From the NCBI RefSeq assembly GCF_000143415.4, contig NW_003314293.1:1680457-1744456 (forward strand): 64,000 nt of DNA. The letters are read 5' to 3'. Below, in pieces: positions 661 through 28,650 of this stretch. Position 1 is the stretch's first letter. Every line of letters starts with the position of its first letter. This DNA comes from Selaginella moellendorffii (lineage: Eukaryota; Plantae; Lycopodiophyta). The notes beneath the pieces are model-generated. The model worked only from the letters and a program-made list of their open reading frames with translations, was not told the origin of the DNA and did no database searches. A program made the translations under genes and the position numbers.

Positions 661-919
661 AGTGATTTAAAATTGGAGTGACTTCACATTGCCTTTAGAC
701 GTGTCAAACTTATGAATCAAGCAAGTACATTGGCAAGTTTGTTCTTCAGATTCTTGCAGAAAATTTTGAATAATACTCTAGCTTCTAGTGGCTTTTTTGA
801 ATTGTAGTCTATCCACGAGGGAGTCTCAGTTGGTATGCCTGACTTTTAATTTCATTCAAGAACTTGTGTATACTTTTGAGTATAAATCTAAGGACACTTT
901 ATCATCCAAGGCTGTTCCA

Positions 920-1165
920 TAGTGGTGGTGTCGGTGGTTCTATTGGGTAAGTGTATAATTCAGTGTGGAAGATTGCCCTATGGGTGCGATGCAAGCTGAA
1001 GCCGCAGGACAGAGAGCGCTCGGTGAGCAACCAATTTCCTGAAACTTTCCTTAATGATTTTTCTTTCTTAGTTTGCCCTGCTGTGTACCAATGCCAGCAG
1101 AGGCGCTCTGTTTAAAGATACATGCTATAACGCTTGCACTCTCCATGGGGTTGTTTATATCTGAG
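920..1165 (+). pseudogene. Decayed copy A of the small Cys-rich peptide gene
   Basis: Matches all three exons of 1474-1777 (VVLLG; MQAEAAGQRAL; CPAVY...TCYNACTL). No in-frame ATG before the signal-peptide exon, intron-1 acceptor lost, frameshifts in exon 3. Confidence 0.7.
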
Positions 1166-1473
1166 AATGTCCAGGTTATGGTAACTCACTATTGAAGTAC
1201 TTGAGAGTTAAGTCTTGTCGATATCATACGAATATGAAGCTTTTTCTGTATGTCTCACTTTGAAAAGGTAGCAAAAGAAAATTTCAAGTTCGATATAGTG
1301 TAGGACTTTCTTTGCATGAGTACCTTGAGATTGCGTGATTCTATGTATAGCTTTATAAGATAATCTTTGTGTACAAGTCTCAGTTGGGAGGCTTGACTTT
1401 TCTGGTTGCAGCGTTCATGAAATCAGAGCGTTTGTGTTACATTCTGTGCTTGGAGCGAAAGGCTTGGTTGGAA

Positions 1474-1777
1474 ATGGGAATGAAATCAAATATCATGGCA
1501 ATTGCTGCGGTGCTGGTTGTTCTCTTGGGTATAATCTCGGCTTGAGTGAAGGATTTTTGTCATTCTTGTTAATATAACAGGGGTTGTGATGCAAGCTGAA
1601 GCTGCAGGACAGCAGGCGCTCCTCCAGCGAGGTGATACATCAGACAATTCGATATAACTTTGGAGATCTCTTCTAGTTTGCCCGGCAGTGTGCCAGTACA
1701 CTAGAGTGGTTTGCAGAGTGAATAGGAATGCATGCTTTAACTCTTGCAATCTCCCGCGAGGATGCCGGCCAGTGTAA
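1474..1777 (+). CDS. Secreted 68-aa six-cysteine peptide, Pin-II (potato type II) proteinase-inhibitor-like; 3 exons
   Basis: Exons 1474-1528, 1581-1631 and 1677-1777 with GT-AG introns of 52 and 45 nt give MGMKSNIMAIAAVLVVLLGVVMQAEAAGQQALLQRVCPAVCQYTRVVCRVNRNACFNSCNLPRGCRPV*. Hydrophobic signal peptide, TATA-like TATAAG near 1354, AATAAA at 1783. Confidence 0.78.
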
Positions 1778-2103
1778 CTTCTAATAAAACGTTATTATTA
1801 TTGTTTATTATGACATAAGGAATCACAACTAGCTTACAAACGACGAAGGATAAGTTGAAGCACGAGGGGGGAAATCCGGAAATGCTGGCCTCGATCTCCA
1901 CTCTGGTTCCCGAGCAAGCGAGAGACTATCTACTCTAGCAGTCACATGCCGCACACACCACAATTTGGCAAAGCTCAAACCTTTTTTGCTCAAAACCGCT
2001 TGTTCCAGGTAAGAGCTTTCGAGAAATTTTCCAAGAAAAGCTGCAGGATAGAACCGGCCAATTTGCTGATGTTTCGATTAAAACTCGTGATTTTATTTTT
2101 TAG

Positions 2104-2199
2104 TCCTTGCTGCGGTGTGCCATACTCTGGCGTCGTTTCCAGAGGCGTTCTGTTTGATACAACGCTTGCAATCTCCCACGAGGATGCCGACCAGTTTGA
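2104..2199 (+). pseudogene. Decayed copy C (exon 3 only) of the Cys-rich peptide gene
   Basis: Follows a ...TTTTTAG acceptor and ends NACNLPRGCRPV*. The upstream part is frameshifted. Confidence 0.7.
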
Positions 2200-2430
2200 C
2201 ATCCAGAACAAAATTGCTGAATAAAGCATTGGTGCAAGTGAGTTTGTGAAACCTCCTAAAGAAGTCAAAGATCAAAAGACAAGGTGGATGCTGCTTGATT
2301 TTTTTTTTCGTTTGATTACACCTATCGCCCAGCTTTCCATTGTTATGCAGTGTTGAGTGGCTTCCAAGTTGAAAGTCCGGTCGGTTTCAAATTACTATGA
2401 AGTTTTTGCTGTATTTCACAAGTAGAAGAA

Positions 2431-2667
2431 CTTGTGGTGCTGGTGGTTCTCTTGGATATAATCTTGGCTTGATCGTGAAGATTCCTTGTCATTCTTGTTA
2501 ATATATCAGGGGTTGGGATGAAAGCTGAAGCTCCTGCACAGCGGGGGCTCCTCCAGCGAGGTGAGCGATCAATCTTACAAGTTTAGATTCCCAATTCGAT
2601 ATAACTTTGGAGATCTTTTCTAGTTTGCCCGACTGTGTGCCAGTTGCCAAGATGCCGGCAAGTGTAA
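2431..2667 (+). pseudogene. Decayed copy D of the Cys-rich peptide gene
   Basis: Closely matches 1505-1777 including both introns. Intron-1 donor is mutated GT>AT and exon 3 has an internal deletion (CPTVCQLPRCRQV*). Confidence 0.75.
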
Positions 2668-2727
2668 TCTGACATAGTCCCATAAGGAACTACATTATTG
2701 TTTGTTGTGTTAAATACCACGAGCCGG

Positions 2728-2769
2728 TTTAGGGTTTAGGGTCTACGGTTTAGGGTTTAGGGTTTAGGG
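2728..2769 (+). repeat. Interstitial plant telomeric repeat (TTTAGGG)x6, one unit degenerate
   Basis: TTTAGGG TTTAGGG TCTACGG TTTAGGG TTTAGGG TTTAGGG read directly. Confidence 0.85.
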
Positions 2770-5876: not shown

Positions 5877-8515
5877 TTACAATTCAAAGTTAAGAGGATG
5901 AAAGTTGAGTTTGTGAGCTTGACAACAGACTCCCACACTTTCTTGCATTCCTTCAGGCCCACAAGCAAACACTCCCACATACTCCTTCCTTCCTTTTGAA
6001 TGCTCTGGAATAATGTCTGCACAGAATCAAACGCCTAATCCCTCTCTTAAGTCTGATTCATCAATTCACCTTGAAACTCCGGATGCTTTCCATACTGAAT
6101 GTTGGTTGGCTTGAGTCCAACTTCAGTTGAAATGGAACCCACATATGGCGCATCTACAAGGTGCAAGTCTTTTCCTTTCCACCAGTTCCAAGCGAGAATC
6201 GTTGCTCCACCGAAGAACACAACTCCAGCAACGTATTCCATGAGCAAGCTGAAACCCCTCCCTGCTCTGGAGAAAGCTTTGTAGGTTTTCTCGTCTTGTG
6301 GAAAGATGTAATAGCGATGAATAACTCCGGCAAGGAGCATGTAACCGAGGAAAGATGCCAAGATCGTTGCAGCATATAGTCTGTAGCCCTGAGTTCTCGA
6401 GATTCCTCTAACTTGCTTCTTGACCTTACTGATGTCTTGTGATGGAGAAGGCTCGGCACACACTGATGCTGTTGTTGCTCTTCCAGCAAACTTGACAATG
6501 TCCAGCTTTTCATTGTAGACCCCATTGTCCAGGGCTTGTTGCTTCTCTCCTATATCTTGGCGAGTAACATAAGCTTGAATGTCAATTTGAAGAGTTTGTA
6601 TGAATATTGTTTTGAGAATGCCAAGCTCATCCAGCTTCCTCACCGCCCACACAAGAAAAATCTTCTCCAGTGGAGTGCGCTGCTTTGTTTGGACCTTGTG
6701 GAGAAGATCCTTGATAATCGATAGAAAAGGAGCTATTCCACTTCCCCCAGCAACGAATAAGTACATTTTGTATCTAACAAAGTAACCCATCATAAGAGCA
6801 AAGTCATATATTTGATACACTTACATATGCAAATAGTCAATGTTATGCCCGTGGGGACTTGGATTCTCGTTGGAAATACTTCTGTAACCCTCTTGGATGA
6901 AGAGCTCCCTGAGTTTGTATGTCCATTTTCCACTTCACTTCACTAAAATCGAGAGCTTGTCAAACTCGACTCCAGAGCAGGAGGTGACTGTAAATGAATG
7001 CCACTGCAGACTTGAAGTCGCAGGGAGGTTCACAAAAATCACACTTGCTGCGTCATATCTGCAAAAATAAGAACAAAAAATATTAATACAGATATTAAAA
7101 AAATAGATAAGTATAATACTTGGGAGTTTTGCAAACGTCAGCTCTATGGTCTCACTACAGATCATCCTTGCCGATACCACCTCAACATGCCTTCTGGATT
7201 GTAAGAGCCTGAATAGTCTATCAGTCTACATTTTGTTTGTGATTGGATTCGTTTTTCCGTGTGGGAGAGAAATGGCTTGCCATGATAGTATAATAAAAGA
7301 GCTCAAATCTCTGCTTGCGAACAGGATTGAGTGATGTGACCCAAATAATCAGGCCAACAATCCATGCAAACATGCTCGTCTTCTCCCACAAAATAAAATG
7401 GACCAAAAACAGAATAAAGTTTAAAAAATGTAAAAAACAGGTTTACCTCTTTGGATTGTGAGAAATTGACATAAACCATATAACCATCATAATATGCCCA
7501 ATCCAAATGTGATAGCGGATCGAGTGCTCAACATTGATAAGCTGGACAAGGGAGGAAAATCTTGCAACTGGAAAGAAAAGAAATGCAAACGGGACGGCCC
7601 AAGCCTGCCTCCAACGATGTTAAACTTCCTCTGCCACCTTCTTGTTTCAATCAAGAAAAGTACATCTCAGTTGAGAGTTCGTGACTTTGAGACACTTAAT
7701 ACTTACAAAGGATCCATGTGGTCGCTCATTCTGGGATGCATCATGAATGGAATATTGATCCTGTAGAAAGATCTTGAGGTGTTTAGCGGTCGTCCAAGCA
7801 AACAAAGCCACAAAAGCCCCAAGCAGCGCCAACTCGGATAATGAGATTAGCGCTAATGGGACTCTAACAAACACTGGATAGTTCCATGGATTTATCTTAA
7901 GTGGCTTCATGGTCCTGCATAAAAGAAAGAAAAAGAGGATGCTTAAATTATTATCAAAGAAGAATTTGAGATTCTAGCTCACTTGCTTCTCTTGCTGTAA
8001 CTTAGATAAATGGCTCTAACGAACGCCACCAGGAGTATGGGGGAGAAGTAAATAAGCGTGTATGCCCCTGGAAGAATCACAGTGAGCAGTGCTATCAACT
8101 TCCTGGCGCGATTATATACCAGTGTCGCCATATGCTTTGGAGGAGACATGGCGAAGAACAGGATTCCAGAATCCACGTTCTCGTTGGCCTCATGAGGAAC
8201 AGGGCGTCGCCCAGGATCGAGGAGCGAATTCTCGCCCAGTATTAATCTGGCAAGAGAATATTCTGGCAAAGCCATTTGTAGTATGATCTTCGCAAAGCAC
8301 CGGACACTTTGATAGGTCCTTGGTGTAAGAAATTCTCGAAATTATTGCCTTCTCCCTCTCCTCCAGCGCCAGAGCCCGGTGTCCCTGTGTTTGCCATGCC
8401 AAGGATTCCAGAAATTTTTTGTCCAAGTTCTCGTTGGCCTCATGATCCAGATCATCATCCATCCTGCAAAGACAATCGCCATGAAAGCCTTGGCAGCAAC
8501 ACGAAGAAAAGCCAT
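5877..8515 (-). pseudogene. FRO: Ferric reduction oxidase (FRO) pseudogene, tandem paralog of 8843-11362
   Basis: Retains LQWHSFTVTS, FVAGGSGIAPF and C-terminal NFHPLNFEL*. Exon 1 is interrupted and partly duplicated, heme-His segments are deleted, and an in-frame TGA at 6935-6937 replaces the paralog's Cys. Confidence 0.75.
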
Positions 8516-22859: not shown

Positions 22860-24800
22860 ACTTTTTGATTGTCACCTTTGTTTCAATTGTGAATCATTTA
22901 AATCTATGGTTTGTTTTTGGGTGGATTTCAATTGTCAAGGATATAGAGGCTGCTTCTCATGCTAACAAGTTTGAAGTTAAAGATTGTTTGAGATTGTTGT
23001 GATGTGATATTTACAGATCTTTTGAGATTGTGAGTTGGAGAATTGTGAGAGTTGATAAATCATGGCTAAAGAGTGATGTGGCATTTATAGATCTTTTAAG
23101 ATTATGACTAAGCTAGTATGAACTTAATGTTTACAGATCTTTGAGATTGTGAACTGTGAAATATGCCTACGTAGAGAACTACAACTGAGGAATGATTGTG
23201 ATGTTGTGATAAGACAAATTGCATATAGCTATGATGCTTGAGTGTGCATATATGTAAGGATTTGAGTGATATTGATGCTAAAAAGGATAGTTCATGCAAT
23301 TTTCATTGAGATGAATATGATGCTAGAGTTGAGCATGCTAATGCCACCATGGACATTTGAGATCTATAAGGGAAGAGTAGCCTTACCACTCCAAGGAATG
23401 ACAATTGCATTAGTTGTTTTGGCCCTACTCAAGAGTCCAGAGATGCTTTTGAACATACTAGGTTTTAGAAGCTCAAGCATATGCTCTATTTGTTGAGGAG
23501 AGTGCATGTCCTACCAAGATCAAGTATCCATCTTACCAACTGGGTGATAATTTTGATAGTGGCATGGGAGTGTGCTGCCAGGTGACCAAGAGAGAAAGGA
23601 TCAATGCCTTTTGTACTAGTTCATCAATTATTCATTATTGGAGATCCTAAGGATATATGCTGTTAGACACCATATAGACAAAAAAGTACATGAAGGGAGA
23701 GATTGTGCAACAGTATTGGACAACACTGCACCATGCCTATATCACCACTGATATAGATAAAGTTGAGAGATTAAGCAAGTTTTCTACTGTGGTTTTCTAG
23801 ATGAGCTAAATATGCATATCTTTGATCAAAACTTGTGGACAAATTGAAGATGCACTTAAGGAATGGAAGCCTTAGACGCAAGTTGCCCATATTGCACACT
23901 TGGAGATGGCTGATGATTGTGGCTGCTCAAATCAGTCATAATTCAAAACTACCAAATTTGAGTAGGAAGACGTCTATGGGGCCAATAGAGGGGAGAGTTA
24001 TAACTAAAATGGAGGCTGGTCTCAAAGAAATCCCACAGTGGTAGTGATAAGTATTGCTACAGGGATGACTCATATACATGGAACCACAAGGATGAGGGGC
24101 TTTACAAACTAACATGCTTTACCTATGGTGAGAAGGGTCACATTTAAAAAGATTGCACAATGTTATTTGATCTAAAGAAGGAATATGAGGAGTTACTTAG
24201 GCATGCCAATTCTAAGTCTTTAGACTGAAGGTTGTGTTCAGGCAGGGGTTAGATGCAAACTTGGTCAAAAACCTTTAATTACACATTGTGGAGGTCAATT
24301 GTTTATTTTCTACCATTGCCAGATATAGAAGTGGAAGTGACAATCATAGTGTGGCTGATGATGCAAGATTAGTTAAAGGTGGTGGCAATTGTGAACATGG
24401 GCTGTGACATCATGACAGTACCCAAGTCTTAGGTGTGAAAGGTAGGAGCTATGGTGCCATGCACCCATGGCCAATGATGAACTTTATACCCCAAATGGTA
24501 TAACCAAGCTCTTTTTGAGAGTTGGCGAGGCAGAAGCTATGGTCTCATATTTGGTCACTAAGTGTGGCTCTATTGGGCATGAATCAGTGTCTTCATCAAC
24601 AGAAGTAGAGGATTGTTATTTGTAGATGGAAGGAAGCTAGTTAGTATCATGGAAGCTATCCCTTTCAAAACATTACTTGTGAGAATAAACTATCTCACAA
24701 ATTCAAGGGAGAGCATACCAATGCATTTCCCTGTGTGGTTGAGTTTAACGAGTTCTTGCCAATTGAGGATGGGTTACAGAGCTTGAGAAAGGTATATTTA
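22860..24800 (+). mobile_element. Decayed LTR-retrotransposon gag/protease relic
   Basis: Degenerate zinc knuckle TCFTYGEKGHI*KDC near 24112-24160 and a protease-like segment VAIVNMGCD near 24380. Short TTTACAGATCTTTGAGATTGTG repeats at about 23010-23150. Confidence 0.55.
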
Positions 24801-27800
24801 TTGCTATATGAATTATTTACCAAAAAAGGAGTTGACTAAAGAATATTTTGTTGGAATATATATACTGCTTAAAGAATATTTTGATTTTTTATTGCCTTTT
24901 CTTCAAATATAATATGAATATTGGTATGTAATAAATTAAATTTAAAAATATTTTGTCATTCTAACTATATATTAAATAATATAACTATACCTTATGTTGT
25001 AACTATAAAATATTATACAATATTAGATATTATTAAAACTATAACAAATTATATCTCAATCCACAAAAAATCTATACTTCTTCTTTTTTCTTTTTCTTTT
25101 CTTATCTTTTGCATGATCATTAACAAGCTTCAACATAAAAGCTAACTTCTTCTTAATATGCATCTTATAATGCTCTAGATGCCTCGCCATAAACTTAGTC
25201 ACAACCTTTACATTGGGTGGTATATCATAAAGAGTTTTCTTCATAATAATACATTGGAACCATTGCATGATGCTGGAAATACAATCTAATCCAAAGGTAT
25301 TGCAATCATTTCATCAATAGTAACTAAGAAAGCCCTTGTGCCAATGAAGAAATCAAGATACAACCACCTTCATAACAAATGTGTCATACAACCATGTTTG
25401 TCAAAGCTTCTAACTTTTCTAATATTAAAGGTGTTTTCTTGTTTAAAAAGAAATGACTTACTATACTTTGCATTCAATGTCATATATAGCAATGTTAGCA
25501 TATTCATAATGAAAGAGATTAGACAAAAAGTTCAAAGGTAAAGCCACTTTTTCCCTACTTCTATTCTTTTATAGAATAGTTTTGATTTATACTGCAAAAT
25601 CAATTATTAGCTAAGAAACACAGAAACTTTAAACATACTTACTTCTTACTGCTGATTTGTGACTCTAGTATGTAATATTTAATTAGAACAAAGTGAGCTC
25701 AAAAAAACATTTATGCCATCTCAATTGTGTATAATGTCATCTTGAAAGCTAAACACCAATTAAAAATCCTATATAATTCATATACAAGACTATCATTAGA
25801 ATAAAGTTGGATTAGATTACTTTCATCATATTTCTTCATTAGACCCCTTGGCAACTCTAATGAAGCCAAAGGGAAGTAAAAACTAACCAAATTTAATATG
25901 TAAAGTGAGCATAAAAAAGATTAAAGGAAATTTACACACTCACAGCAAAGGAATTCTAAAAGTGGTAGTATATAAATTTCTTTAACTCCTCAAGAATTAA
26001 TTTATGTTGTTTGAAAGTCTCAATATCTTGAACTATTGGATCTTCACCAGTCTCAAGATTATCAACAAAATCCTTATCAGCATATTTACTATATGTTTTA
26101 TAACTTTCTTGAAGAATGACTTCAGTTAAGTCTTTTATACCCCCATGTTAGACAGCAAAGTGGCCAAATGCCTTTAGTGTTTCATCTGAATTATCGATAT
26201 ATAACTTTTATCTAAGCTTGTGAGAAGGCCTTTTTCATTTCTTCTAAGATTAGTTAGAAAAAACAAAGTTAAAAGGAAAAAAACAAAAAAAGAGAAAGTT
26301 GATGAGCTTATTAAGTGCAATAAAAGCTTTTAGCAGTTGTTGAGTAATATGCCTTCTTTTCTCCTTTTGTGGTTATAGTTTCACTTTGGTAAGCTCATTA
26401 ACATAATCAAATTCTATCAAGAATTCTTCCTTGATGGTCATGAGTTACTTCTTTTTGAACTAATCTTGTGCATATAAGTTTTATATTTTTTGCTCATTTT
26501 TCAACACTATAGCAACAATAAGATCTAGCCACTAAAGATAGCTTTCTCATTTTAAGTTTGTGATTCCAGTACTATTAGGTAGTTTTTTGTCCCCATATAT
26601 GTAGGTAGGTAAAGTAAGGGAAAACCATGGCTTAACAATGGTTGGAATTGCCTTCCATATAAATTTGAAGTACTTAAAATATATAAAAAGTTAAAACTTG
26701 AAAAGTAGAAAGTGATGAAAGTGCTACCTATACTCTATATATTGGCTAGCTTCTTGCATTATTACTTTAGTTGTCATATCCCTTTAATCTTCATCATCAT
26801 TCTTTTTTATCTCAACCTTACTGAACATTAGTGGCTAAATTTGTAGAATGCCAAACTTAAGTTCACACCTTTAATAGTGTTTATACTTTGATTAATCTTT
26901 TCTAGAGAAAGTTCTTCACCCACCTCCTCAACACACCTAATCACTTTTTCCACCATTTTGATATTCATCACTTTTTTTCCTCTATTGAGATTAAAAAGTG
27001 AACAACCTTAAATGATTTACTAATTGCTTTGAACACCTTAAATGTTTTTAATTTGTATAAATTTGGAATTTGTGCAAAATTATCATGTCCAACTTTTCAA
27101 ATATGCACTATTTATATTGTGAATCCTCTATATTGAAGCTTATCACAACATCGAACCATTCCTTTCCAAATTTAAGTGTGAGATATTCATCAATTTTATT
27201 ATCTTCACTGTATGTTTTTGCTTGTTTTTGTACTCCTTTCTAACAGTAGCATCAATGTCAAGACTCATCTTCAATATCTCAAAGTCATTGTTAATGTCAT
27301 ATTAGAGAATAAAAAAAATTTAAAAAACTATTTTAGCAAATTTAAGTACTTTAATAAGATGTTATAGAAATGTATTAAGGGAACTTGGAATAGCTATTAT
27401 ACTTCTTAAATCAGTTTTTCTTAGTTACTATCATGTTAAGTTAGACTTTTCCTTGTCCATAAGCTCGTTTATAATCTTGTTGGTATCTATTTGAAGAATG
27501 TTCCACATAGCCATGATTGTGTGTAGAATAGTCATTTTGACCATTAGATCTTCATATTGTCTATATAAGAAAAAATTATGTCAATAAAGAATCTAAAGAA
27601 AAAATAGGTGTATTTATTCATAGAAGTCAAAATGCATGTCTCTAGATGGAGAAGCACAATGTTTATTTATTTCCAAGAGGAGAAAGGATCATATGGAAAT
27701 TTGAGAAGAGGTAGTGTCTTGGTGTGAGCAGTTATTCTAGCTTAGCAATCCCATTGATAGGGTGTTGAAGATTATACACTGCAAGAAGTGTTAAACTGAT

Positions 27801-28650
27801 GAACCTTTGCAAGTCTGCTGAGCAACTCTATTGCGTGTAACTTGCATTTTAAACCAAGATCTATATGAAGTTAACTCCATAGCATAACAAATCTTCTATA
27901 ATGGATTGCCAATGGTAGTGAAGTCATGGGTTGCAATATATAAAGACAAGCTATTGCAAATGTTCTTTCAAGTGGCAAAAGTGAGGATTAACGACATTAA
28001 GGCTATTGGCAAGGTAGTCAAGGTCTCATGTGCATCAGAATCAGGTGAGGACAAAGAAAAGTAGGCAAAAAATGGTGGAAATTAAATGTGGCTAATTCTC
28101 CCCAAAAGGAAGTCCCTTTAAGAGTTAGGGAAAAGGATGATTACCAGAAGTGGCCATATTTAAAGAATTATTGAGCATGAGGACAATCTGTTAAGAGAAA
28201 TGGGCTTAACTGCCAGTTGGACTTGTACAGCTCGATATAGCAGTATAAAAATGGGTGTATACTCGAGTGAAGTTGGAATGGACAGTTACAATTCATTTGT
28301 GCTGGTAAAACTTTCTAGATGCCCAATTTAATATTTATGACAATTAGAGTGCATTGCATGCAAATTCTGCTATACTCCACCATGAATCTATTTGGCATCC
28401 CTTTTCTGCTTGACTCACCCTGTTCTTGACAGTCATGCCAGAGAGATTGAAGGTAGGGAGATTTCTACCAAATATAGGAACTTGTGGTCTGTCCAGGAAG
28501 AGAGCTGAAACTGATTTGGCAGATAGAACAATAGTGATAGCTTTGAGCAAAGTTGAAATCTTTATAAATTGTTTATTGAGTCAAATACTCTTTGATTATT
28601 TACACCTAATTGGTTGATGATAACCTAATACTACTTTAAACCCAAGGATA
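24800..28650. mobile_element. Very AT-rich degenerate TE-like DNA
   Basis: No long ORFs, strong CpG depletion, composition unlike flanking genes. Family not identified. Confidence 0.3.

What the first reader, a model, noticed from the sequence alone, without database searches (positions are those of the whole stretch)
1474..1777. Hidden three-exon gene for a minimal three-disulfide Pin-II-like inhibitor
Seen: absent from the ORF track because the exons are 55, 51 and 101 nt. Splicing at canonical sites gives a signal peptide, a short pro-region ending in Arg, and VCPAVCQYTRVVCRVNRNACFNSCNLPRGCRPV. Known: Pin-II (MEROPS I20) domains have a C-P-P1-x-C reactive loop and a C-x-N-C-C-x4-G-C motif. 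In potato PCI-1 the first Cys of CC pairs with the later ICEG Cys. Pin-II genes have a phase-1 intron splitting a Gly codon in the signal peptide. Here the spacing C-F-N-S-C-x4-G-C matches, the first Cys of CC is Ser, the segment holding its partner is absent, and intron 1 is phase 1 within a signal-peptide Gly codon. Inference: a roughly 33-residue Pin-II mini-domain lacking exactly one disulfide pair, with P1 = Ala (elastase/subtilisin-type specificity) and an extra intron isolating the pro-region.
Basis: partly seen in the sequence, partly recalled or inferred. Interest (0 to 1): 0.8.

Follow-up and report, generated by a model that had tools for sequence, protein, structure and literature searches.

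The report
Spikemoss secreted six-cysteine mini-peptide gene
A small three-exon gene of the spikemoss Selaginella moellendorffii, not annotated as such, encodes a secreted, positively charged peptide of about 33 residues with six cysteines; the gene family is real and transcribed, but its proposed kinship to potato type II protease inhibitors could not be confirmed.

Summary
ATG 1474, GT/AG introns of 52 and 45 nt (both phase 1) and stop 1775-1777 give a signal peptide, a short linker ending in Arg and a six-Cys peptide (window:1679-1774:+).

The genome is Selaginella moellendorffii. An RNA-derived contig identical to the window splices intron 1 exactly as predicted, but runs 11 nt into intron 2.

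An intact sister gene lies about 21 kb away (L001:6001-6338). It has the same exons and phases and is clearly expressed. Its exon 2-exon 3 junction and its stop codon are read by RNA-seq. Exon indels are multiples of three, and exon 3 has 4 synonymous against 2 non-synonymous changes. Three decayed copies flank the gene.

The Pin-II reading is only partly supported:
- The Cys spacing and a phase-1 intron splitting a Gly codon in the signal peptide do resemble Pot II genes.
- The Pfam Pin-II model, PDB sequence and profile searches, and fold searches gave nothing.
- Two structure predictions contradict each other (all-beta versus helix-loop-helix).
- The peptide has net charge about +5.

I read it as an orphan, lineage-specific secreted defence peptide. 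Direct antimicrobial action is about 0.4, a Pin-II-derived inhibitor about 0.25.

The scan noted the same family before on other DNA (s1-402731), probably the allelic array.

The parts
1474..1528 (+). Exon 1. Start codon plus 18 codons and the first base of a Gly codon. Encodes the n- and h-regions of a signal peptide (GRAVY 1.97).
   Evidence: The RNA-derived contig X1 covers 1456-1527 and joins to 1580 (equivalent to 1528/1581) with no mismatch.
1529..1580 (+). Intron 1. 52 nt, GT..AG, phase 1, splits a Gly codon inside the signal peptide.
   Evidence: It is removed in the X1 contig at depth 7. It is 83% identical to the 52-nt intron 1 of the sister gene.
1581..1631 (+). Exon 2. Encodes the end of the signal peptide (a likely A-E-A cleavage motif) and a 9-residue linker or pro-region ending L-L-Q-R.
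   Evidence: It is 92% identical to the sister's exon 2. The L-L-Q-R end is kept in the sister and in relic D; relic A lacks it.
1632..1676 (+). Intron 2. 45 nt, GT..AG, phase 1. Removal is not shown for this copy.
   Evidence: The X1 contig runs 11 nt into it, to 1642. The homologous 70-nt intron of the sister gene is removed in 4 RNA-seq reads.
1677..1777 (+). Exon 3. Encodes the whole mature six-Cys peptide (33 residues counting the split Val codon) and the TAA stop. Cys gaps are 3/6/6/3/5; 5 Arg and no Asp or Glu; pI 9.3.
   Evidence: Against the sister gene there are 4 synonymous and 2 non-synonymous changes plus one in-frame 6-nt indel. The haplotype-2 allele has 1 non-synonymous change (Pro>Leu at 1683) and 1 synonymous change (1753).
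1783..1788 (+). AATAAA polyadenylation-type signal, 6 nt after the stop.
   Evidence: The sister gene has AATAAA about 30 nt after its stop.
905..1164 (+). Relic copy A (approximate bounds). It has no in-frame ATG, the intron-1 acceptor is AG>TG, one Cys is replaced by Tyr, and there is an in-frame stop.
   Evidence: No reads map to it.
2104..2199 (+). Relic copy C. An exon-3-like piece only, with an in-frame TGA; the C-terminal 13 codons are conserved.
   Evidence: It has the same stop in haplotype 2.
2397..2667 (+). Relic copy D. It has no in-frame ATG and the intron-1 donor is GT>AT at 2456-2457. In this haplotype exon 3 has lost 63 nt between 2644 and 2645.
   Evidence: Haplotype 2 keeps a full six-Cys exon 3 (L003:949-1050) but has the same dead donor and start.

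Best explanation
The stretch is a real protein-coding gene of Selaginella moellendorffii. It is one of two intact members, on this scaffold, of a small family found only in this species so far. The family turns over by duplication and decay, and three relics lie next to this gene.

The 68-residue precursor has three parts: a classical signal peptide of about 26 residues, a conserved 9-residue linker ending in Arg, and a 33-residue peptive with six cysteines and a net charge of about +5. After secretion the peptide is presumably locked by three disulfides into a compact, protease-resistant fold.

I take it to be an extracellular defence peptide. The single most likely mode of action is direct antimicrobial activity of the cationic, Val/Arg-alternating disulfide-stapled peptide on microbial envelopes.

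Shown: the gene structure, splicing of intron 1 in this copy and of intron 2 in the sister, transcription, and coding constraint on the mature peptide. Inferred: secretion, processing, disulfide formation and activity.
For: - Gene model and translations.
- Organism.
- Spliced contig identical to the window.
- The sister gene L001:6001-6338 has the same three exons, phases and stop position. The RNA-seq reads match it exactly and run through its stop into the 3'UTR.
- Identity by segment against the sister gene: exon 1 81%, intron 1 83%, exon 2 92%, exon 3 89%; intron 2 46%, 5' flank 64%, 3' flank 42%. All exon indels are multiples of three.
- Exon 3 has 4 synonymous and 2 non-synonymous changes.
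- Charge +4.7, pI 9.3, no acidic residue.
- No family assignment from Pfam, PDB, the 1.84-billion-protein search or the atlas. This fits an orphan cysteine-rich peptide family.
- Relics with stops and lost splice sites indicate birth-and-death evolution, which is usual for plant defence peptides.
Against: - No activity was tested, and the fold and disulfide pairing are unresolved (disagree).
- This copy was not detected in the one raw RNA-seq run laid. All 18 reads belong to the sister.
- Its only RNA contig keeps the start of intron 2.
- The position aligned to the sister's TATAAAA reads CATGAAA here, so this copy may be weakly expressed or on its way to decay.
- The Cys spacing and signal-peptide intron resemble Pin-II inhibitors, which would point to protease inhibition instead.
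Confidence: 0.4

Rival explanations
1. This is a Pin-II-derived mini-inhibitor. The peptide would be a potato-type-II repeat in the ancestral L-H order that has lost the last beta strand and one disulfide. It would inhibit serine proteases in the canonical substrate-like way through the C-P-A-V-C loop, with P1 = Ala.
For: - Spacing C-x3-C ...
- A phase-1 GT..AG intron splits a Gly codon after 18 signal-peptide residues. PMC2259423 reports this feature in all surveyed Pot II genes, after 12-17 residues.
- Pin-II inhibitors are reported in S. moellendorffii, and natural Cys-loss variants exist (PMC8188708).
- One AF2 model is a three-stranded sheet.
- Copies differ at the two residues after Cys1: P-A, L-A and P-T.
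Against: - The Pfam Pin-II model gives no hit at E up to 10.
- No PDB Pin-II chain is found by sequence or profile.
- No Pin-II chain reaches Z 2 among 48,161 PDB representatives.
- The second AF2 model is helical.
- It has 6 rather than 8 Cys, 33 rather than 50-55 residues, and an extra intron.
- It has no acidic residues.
- From my own knowledge, phase-1 introns in signal peptides with a split Gly are common in plant cysteine-rich peptide genes, so that feature is not specific.
Confidence: 0.25
2. It is another small disulfide-rich fold with inhibitor or antimicrobial function. One option is an alpha-hairpinin-like helix-loop-helix (CX3C-x13-CX3C) with an added third disulfide. The other is a knottin, since spacing 3/6/6/3/5 lies within knottin loop ranges (from my own knowledge).
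For: - Two CX3C motifs are 13-15 residues apart.
- The single-sequence AF2 model of the sister's pro+mature piece puts each CX3C on a helix.
- Alpha-hairpinins are cationic defence peptides, and some are trypsin inhibitors with the reactive Arg between the CXXXC motifs (PMC7191063).
Against: - The other AF2 model is all-beta and slightly more confident.
- The sequence is rich in Val, Thr, Tyr and Asn, which are poor helix formers (inference).
- Known alpha-hairpinins have four Cys and come from multi-module or vicilin-type precursors. This peptide has six Cys and a single-module 68-residue precursor.
- Foldseek found nothing for the helical model.
Confidence: 0.15
3. It is a secreted signalling peptide, a ligand of a receptor kinase like other plant cysteine-rich peptides, released from a pro-form at the conserved L-L-Q-R site.
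For: The linker ending in Arg is conserved at the exon 2 / exon 3 boundary in this gene, the sister gene and relic D. The mature peptide is small and constrained.
Against: - No similarity to any known signalling peptide family.
- Tandem decay of copies and restriction to one species fit defence better than signalling (inference).
Confidence: 0.1
4. This particular copy is a young, still intact but functionally dying paralogue, and only the sister gene makes peptide.
For: - There were 0 of 18 RNA-seq reads from this copy in run X4.
- Intron 2 is retained in the only contig.
- The TATA-like box of the sister is altered here, and an in-frame upstream ATG lies at 1417.
- Three neighbouring copies are already dead.
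Against: - The frame is intact and all four splice sites are canonical.
- Exon 3 is intact in both haplotypes.
- A spliced contig at depth 7 exists in run X1.
Confidence: 0.25

Closest known systems
Potato type II (Pin-II / Pot II, MEROPS I20, Pfam PF02428) proteinase inhibitor repeat, single-repeat L-H type as in the Arabidopsis and rice genes
   Same: Both are secreted. Both have a phase-1 intron splitting a Gly codon in the signal peptide. The order is reactive-loop-like C-x3-C first, then C-x3-C-x5-C with Gly before the last Cys. The family is reported in the same species.
   Different: It has 6 rather than 8 Cys, about 33 rather than 50-55 residues, and no C-terminal strand. Two loops are shorter, and a second intron precedes the mature domain. 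It is strongly basic. There is no HMM, profile or fold match.
Alpha-hairpinins (EcAMP1, MBP-1, VhTI, BWI-2 type; CX3C-Xn-CX3C)
   Same: Two CX3C motifs lie 13-15 residues apart, the peptide is cationic and Arg-rich, and the expected outer/inner pairing is the same as the Pin-II-like one.
   Different: It has a third disulfide and a sequence with low helix propensity. The precursor is a single module rather than a multi-module or vicilin-type one. Only one low-confidence model is helical.
Knottin-type plant inhibitors (squash trypsin inhibitors, potato carboxypeptidase inhibitor)
   Same: It has six Cys in 30-40 residues, loop lengths within knottin ranges, and C-P-x at the start as in squash inhibitors (from my own knowledge).
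   Different: There is no sequence or fold match, and the pairing is unknown.
Lineage-specific plant cysteine-rich peptide families (defensin-like and similar)
   Same: The precursor is small with a signal peptide, an intron lies in the signal-peptide region, the genes show clustered birth-and-death evolution, and the mature peptide is basic.
   Different: The Cys pattern fits none of the named families, and there are three exons.

Membership tests
Pin-II / Pot II (PF02428, MEROPS I20) | Match to the family profile (Pfam Prot_inhib_II) at or above its cut-off | tested here: not met
   hmmscan against Pfam-A at E up to 10 gave 0 families for window:1679-1774:+. For P0005:1-70 and P0005:37-70 it gave only a chance hit to yeast metallothionein.
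Pin-II / Pot II (PF02428, MEROPS I20) | Eight-cysteine motif giving four disulfides in a 50-55 residue repeat | tested here: not met
   It has six Cys in 33 residues. The family definition is from PMC8188708 and PMC2259423.
Pin-II / Pot II (PF02428, MEROPS I20) | Phase-1 GT..AG intron inside the signal peptide splitting a Gly codon | tested here: met
   G|GG is split at 1528/1581 after 18 residues, and the junction is seen in RNA. The feature is described in PMC2259423. It is not exclusive to this family (my own knowledge).
Pin-II / Pot II (PF02428, MEROPS I20) | Two-exon gene with no intron between the signal peptide and the mature domain | tested here: not met
   A second phase-1 intron (1632-1676) is present here and in the sister gene.
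Pin-II / Pot II (PF02428, MEROPS I20) | Pin-II fold (reactive loop on a three-stranded sheet) with the family's disulfide connectivity | tested here: inconclusive
   AF2 gave three strands at pLDDT 70.7, but a helical model at pLDDT 63.4 for the sister's pro+mature piece. No Pin-II chain appeared in the fold searches. Model coordinates were not readable, so the pairing is unknown.
Pin-II / Pot II (PF02428, MEROPS I20) | Inhibition of serine proteases | not testable with these tools
Alpha-hairpinins | CX3C-Xn-CX3C cysteine motif | tested here: met
   The Cys gaps are 3/6/6/3/5, so C1-x3-C2 and C4-x3-C5 lie 13 residues apart, and 15 in the sister. The motif is defined in PMC7191063.
Alpha-hairpinins | Helix-loop-helix fold with two disulfides | tested here: inconclusive
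   One model is helical and one is all-beta. It has six rather than four Cys.
Knottins | Cystine knot pairing C1-C4, C2-C5, C3-C6 | not testable with these tools
   Only the spacing could be compared. No knottin appeared in the fold searches.

The most novel reading that the evidence does not exclude
The family is a natural minimal Pin-II domain. It would be a 33-residue, three-disulfide version of the potato type II inhibitor repeat in a lycophyte, either a reduced derivative or a relic of the form from which the eight-Cys repeat grew. It would still work as a canonical serine-protease inhibitor with a small P1 residue.
Probability: 0.25. Interest if true: 0.65.

Novelty: new variant of a known kind. 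Interest (0 to 1): 0.4.

Why it matters
- It shows that short multi-exon peptide genes are missed or mis-modelled in the Selaginella annotation. The sister gene is filed as a 198-residue hypothetical protein whose last 128 residues are not supported by RNA reads.
- If the Pin-II kinship were proven, the peptide would be the smallest natural member of that family, in an early-diverging vascular plant. That would bear on how the repeat arose and offer a very small inhibitor scaffold.
- If it is instead an orphan cationic peptide, it adds a lycophyte-specific family to the plant defence peptide repertoire.
- Either way the claim can be tested directly by synthesis, disulfide mapping and simple assays.

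Tried and rejected
**Family, homologue and fold searches that found nothing**
- Pfam scan of the exon-3 peptide and of the sister precursor: no Pin-II hit.
- PDB sequence search with the peptide and with a four-row profile: none at E up to 10.
- Exhaustive search of 1.84 billion representatives: only the sister's mis-modelled protein P0005.
- Word-indexed searches with P0005:1-70, with P0005 scored on region 1-70, and with P0005:27-70: nothing else.
- Protein atlas: best score 0.79 to lantibiotic clusters, which is noise.
- Foldseek and VIA-align on the beta model: best E 0.9 and Z 2.4, generic small sheets. A locust protease inhibitor (4gi3_C) at Z 2.2 was tied with unrelated chains.
- Foldseek on the helical model: no match.

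**Steps that could not be run**
- Complex prediction with Streptomyces griseus protease B: not folded, because the tool does not pair a plant chain with a microbial one. This is no evidence either way, and I did not try another route.
- The PINIR supplement held no Selaginella sequence. I therefore had no referenced Pin-II sequence for a profile-profile comparison and left that step out rather than type one from memory.
Each exon was used by reference, and P0005:1-70 (the sister's annotated N-terminus) served as a referenced full-length stand-in.
- Haplotype 2 could only be read from inside exon 3 onward (L003), so the allele's exons 1-2 were not seen.

**Reading considered and set aside**
- I first rejected the alpha-hairpinin reading on the beta model, then reopened it after the helical model.

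Full report
**1. The observation**

- ATG at 1474 and exon 1 to 1528.
- GT at 1529 and AG at 1579-1580 (intron 1, 52 nt).
- Exon 2 at 1581-1631.
- GT at 1632 and AG at 1675-1676 (intron 2, 45 nt).
- Exon 3 at 1677-1777, ending in TAA.
- AATAAA at 1783-1788.

Both introns are phase 1; the first splits a Gly codon (G|GG) and the second a Val codon (G|TT). Translated exon by exon, the model gives three parts:
- A hydrophobic signal-peptide core (GRAVY 1.97).
- The end of the signal peptide with an A-E-A motif, plus a nine-residue linker ending L-L-Q-R.
- A peptide with six Cys at gaps 3/6/6/3/5.

All searches used single exons by reference or the sister gene's stored protein.

**2. Organism and setting**

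The neighbouring 605-residue HSP70-like ORF is identical to an NCBI protein of Selaginella moellendorffii. The window is scaffold GL377597.1 from about position 1,680,457. An intronless PPR gene and other plant genes follow. Introns of about 50 nt are evidently processed in this plant, because the 52-nt intron 1 is seen spliced.

**3. A small family with decaying copies**

Repeat and pattern searches and alignment show three further copies beside the gene.
- Copy A (about 905-1164) lacks an in-frame ATG and the intron-1 acceptor. It has a Cys>Tyr change and an in-frame stop.
- Copy C (2104-2199) is an exon-3 piece with an in-frame TGA.
- Copy D (2397-2667) lacks an in-frame ATG, has AT instead of GT at the first donor, and in this haplotype has lost 63 nt of exon 3.

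The exhaustive protein search found one relative, P0005. It is the annotated hypothetical protein SELMODRAFT_416968, encoded about 21 kb away on the opposite strand of the same scaffold. Its locus (L001:6001-6338) has the same three exons, both phase-1 introns (52 and 70 nt) and a stop at the same codon.

Identity to the window gene by segment:

| Segment | Identity |
|---|---|
| 5' flank | 64% |
| Exon 1 | 81% |
| Intron 1 | 83% |
| Exon 2 | 92% |
| Intron 2 | 46% |
| Exon 3 | 89% |
| 3' flank | 42% |

The only exon indels are 3 and 6 nt. In exon 3 there are four synonymous and two non-synonymous changes, plus TAA>TGA. This is the signature of a constrained coding sequence, strongest on the mature peptide.

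**4. Transcripts**

- **Run X1.** A 167-nt contig with adapters at both ends has no mismatch to the window. It covers 1456-1527 joined to 1580-1642. Intron 1 is removed exactly as predicted, but the molecule continues 11 nt into intron 2.
- **Runs X2 and X3.** These hold the unspliced genomic form.
- **Run X4.** In the raw RNA-seq run all 18 reads are 95-99% alike. Their differences and loose ends match the sister gene exactly.
  - They use the donor homologous to 1631 (four reads with different starts). Read length leaves room only for the spliced form.
  - Twelve reads run through the sister's TGA into its 3'UTR, so the annotated 198-residue tail of P0005 is an artefact.
  - First mates lie on the minus strand, as expected for a plus-strand RNA in the usual stranded libraries.

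For the window's own copy, junction 1 is shown and junction 2 is not.

**5. The second haplotype**

L003 (GL377610.1) begins one base inside exon 3 of the allele. The allele differs at 1683 (CCG>CTG, Pro>Leu directly after the first Cys) and at 1753 (synonymous). The adjacent non-coding DNA differs by 0.69%. Relic D keeps a full six-Cys exon 3 there, but has the same dead start and donor.

Among the four available mature sequences (alignment A2), variation sits in three places: the two residues after Cys1, the Cys3-Cys4 loop (6 or 8 residues) and the Cys5-Cys6 loop.

**6. Is it a Pin-II inhibitor?**

For:
- The spacing C-x3-C ...
- The L-H order of the single-repeat genes.
- The phase-1 intron splitting a signal-peptide Gly codon. 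PMC2259423 reports this in all surveyed Pot II genes and uses it as an argument for homology.
- PMC8188708 lists S. moellendorffii among the species with Pin-II inhibitors, and describes natural repeats that have lost cysteines.

Against:
- No Pfam hit at E up to 10.
- No PDB sequence or profile hit.
- No Pin-II chain in Foldseek or VIA-align results.
- Six rather than eight Cys, 33 rather than 50-55 residues, and a second intron.
- A net charge of +4.7 with no acidic residue.

The AF2 model of the 32-residue peptive with the four-row alignment is a three-stranded sheet (pLDDT 70.7). The model of the sister's 44-residue linker+mature piece is helix-loop-helix, with each CX3C on one helix (pLDDT 63.4). 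The fold is therefore unresolved.

The helical model recalls alpha-hairpinins (PMC7191063). The spacing also lies within knottin ranges (my own knowledge). From my own knowledge, phase-1 introns with a split Gly in signal peptides are frequent in plant cysteine-rich peptide genes, so the gene-structure match is suggestive rather than specific.

I put descent from Pin-II at about 0.25.

**7. Most likely function**

The following are typical of plant defence peptides:
- A compact peptide that is secreted, basic and held by three disulfides.
- Stretches of alternating Val and Arg.
- Membership of a species-restricted family that duplicates and decays.

My odds for how it acts:

| Reading | Odds |
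|---|---|
| Direct antimicrobial action | about 0.4 |
| Pin-II-derived canonical protease inhibition | about 0.25 |
| Another mini-fold (hairpinin- or knottin-like) with either activity | about 0.15 |
| Signalling | about 0.1 |

Separately, there is about a 0.25 chance that this copy is losing function while the sister carries it. No reads from it were seen in X4, its only contig retains intron 2, the sister's TATAAAA reads CATGAAA here, and an in-frame ATG lies at 1417.

**8. Novelty**

No paper describing this family turned up in the literature searches. The window's own gene is not annotated as this peptide. A 157-residue model spans window 980-1938 but was not retrieved as a relative of P0005:1-70.

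The scan noted the same kind of array before on another piece of this genome (s1-402731). Its length of 1767 letters fits the allelic array on haplotype 2, and its follow-up reached a similar verdict. That is a lead, not independent evidence.

Noticed in passing
window 2725-2766 (also L003 about 1113-1140): There is a short interstitial run of the plant telomere repeat TTTAGGG, about six units, directly downstream of relic D. It is present in both haplotypes. One DNA contig shows a 1-nt length difference at 2746.
   Followed up: partly
L001:6336-7009: The annotated 198-residue protein SELMODRAFT_416968 (P0005) escapes the peptide's stop by a splice just before the last Val codon. Twelve RNA-seq reads instead run through the TGA into the 3'UTR, so only residues 1-70 of the model are supported.
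   Followed up: partly
window 980-1938 (+): A called 157-residue gene model spans from the exon-2-like piece of relic A (ATG at 980) to a TAG at 1936-1938, across the finding. It was not retrieved as similar to the sister precursor and looks like an ab initio chimera.
   Followed up: no
window 1416-1422 versus L001:5960-5966: The sister gene has TATAAAA 35-41 nt before its ATG. The aligned position in the window reads CATGAAA, which also creates an in-frame upstream ATG at 1417. This may explain the lower expression of the window copy.
   Followed up: partly
window 2644/2645 versus L003:968-1030: There is a 63-nt presence/absence difference between the two haplotypes inside exon 3 of relic D. 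The haplotype-2 form still reads as a complete six-Cys peptide.
   Followed up: yes
window 6047-6820 (-), 11690-13507 (+), 20110-22578 (+): Neighbouring genes are two ferric-reductase/NADPH-oxidase-like genes, an HSP70-like gene in a GC-rich stretch (GC 0.62) and an intronless 822-residue PPR gene. Further genes (photolyase-like, ubiquitin-LRR, WD40) are called downstream.
   Followed up: no
window 24001-28000: An AT-rich stretch (GC 0.30-0.32) contains no ORF of 110 codons or more.
   Followed up: no
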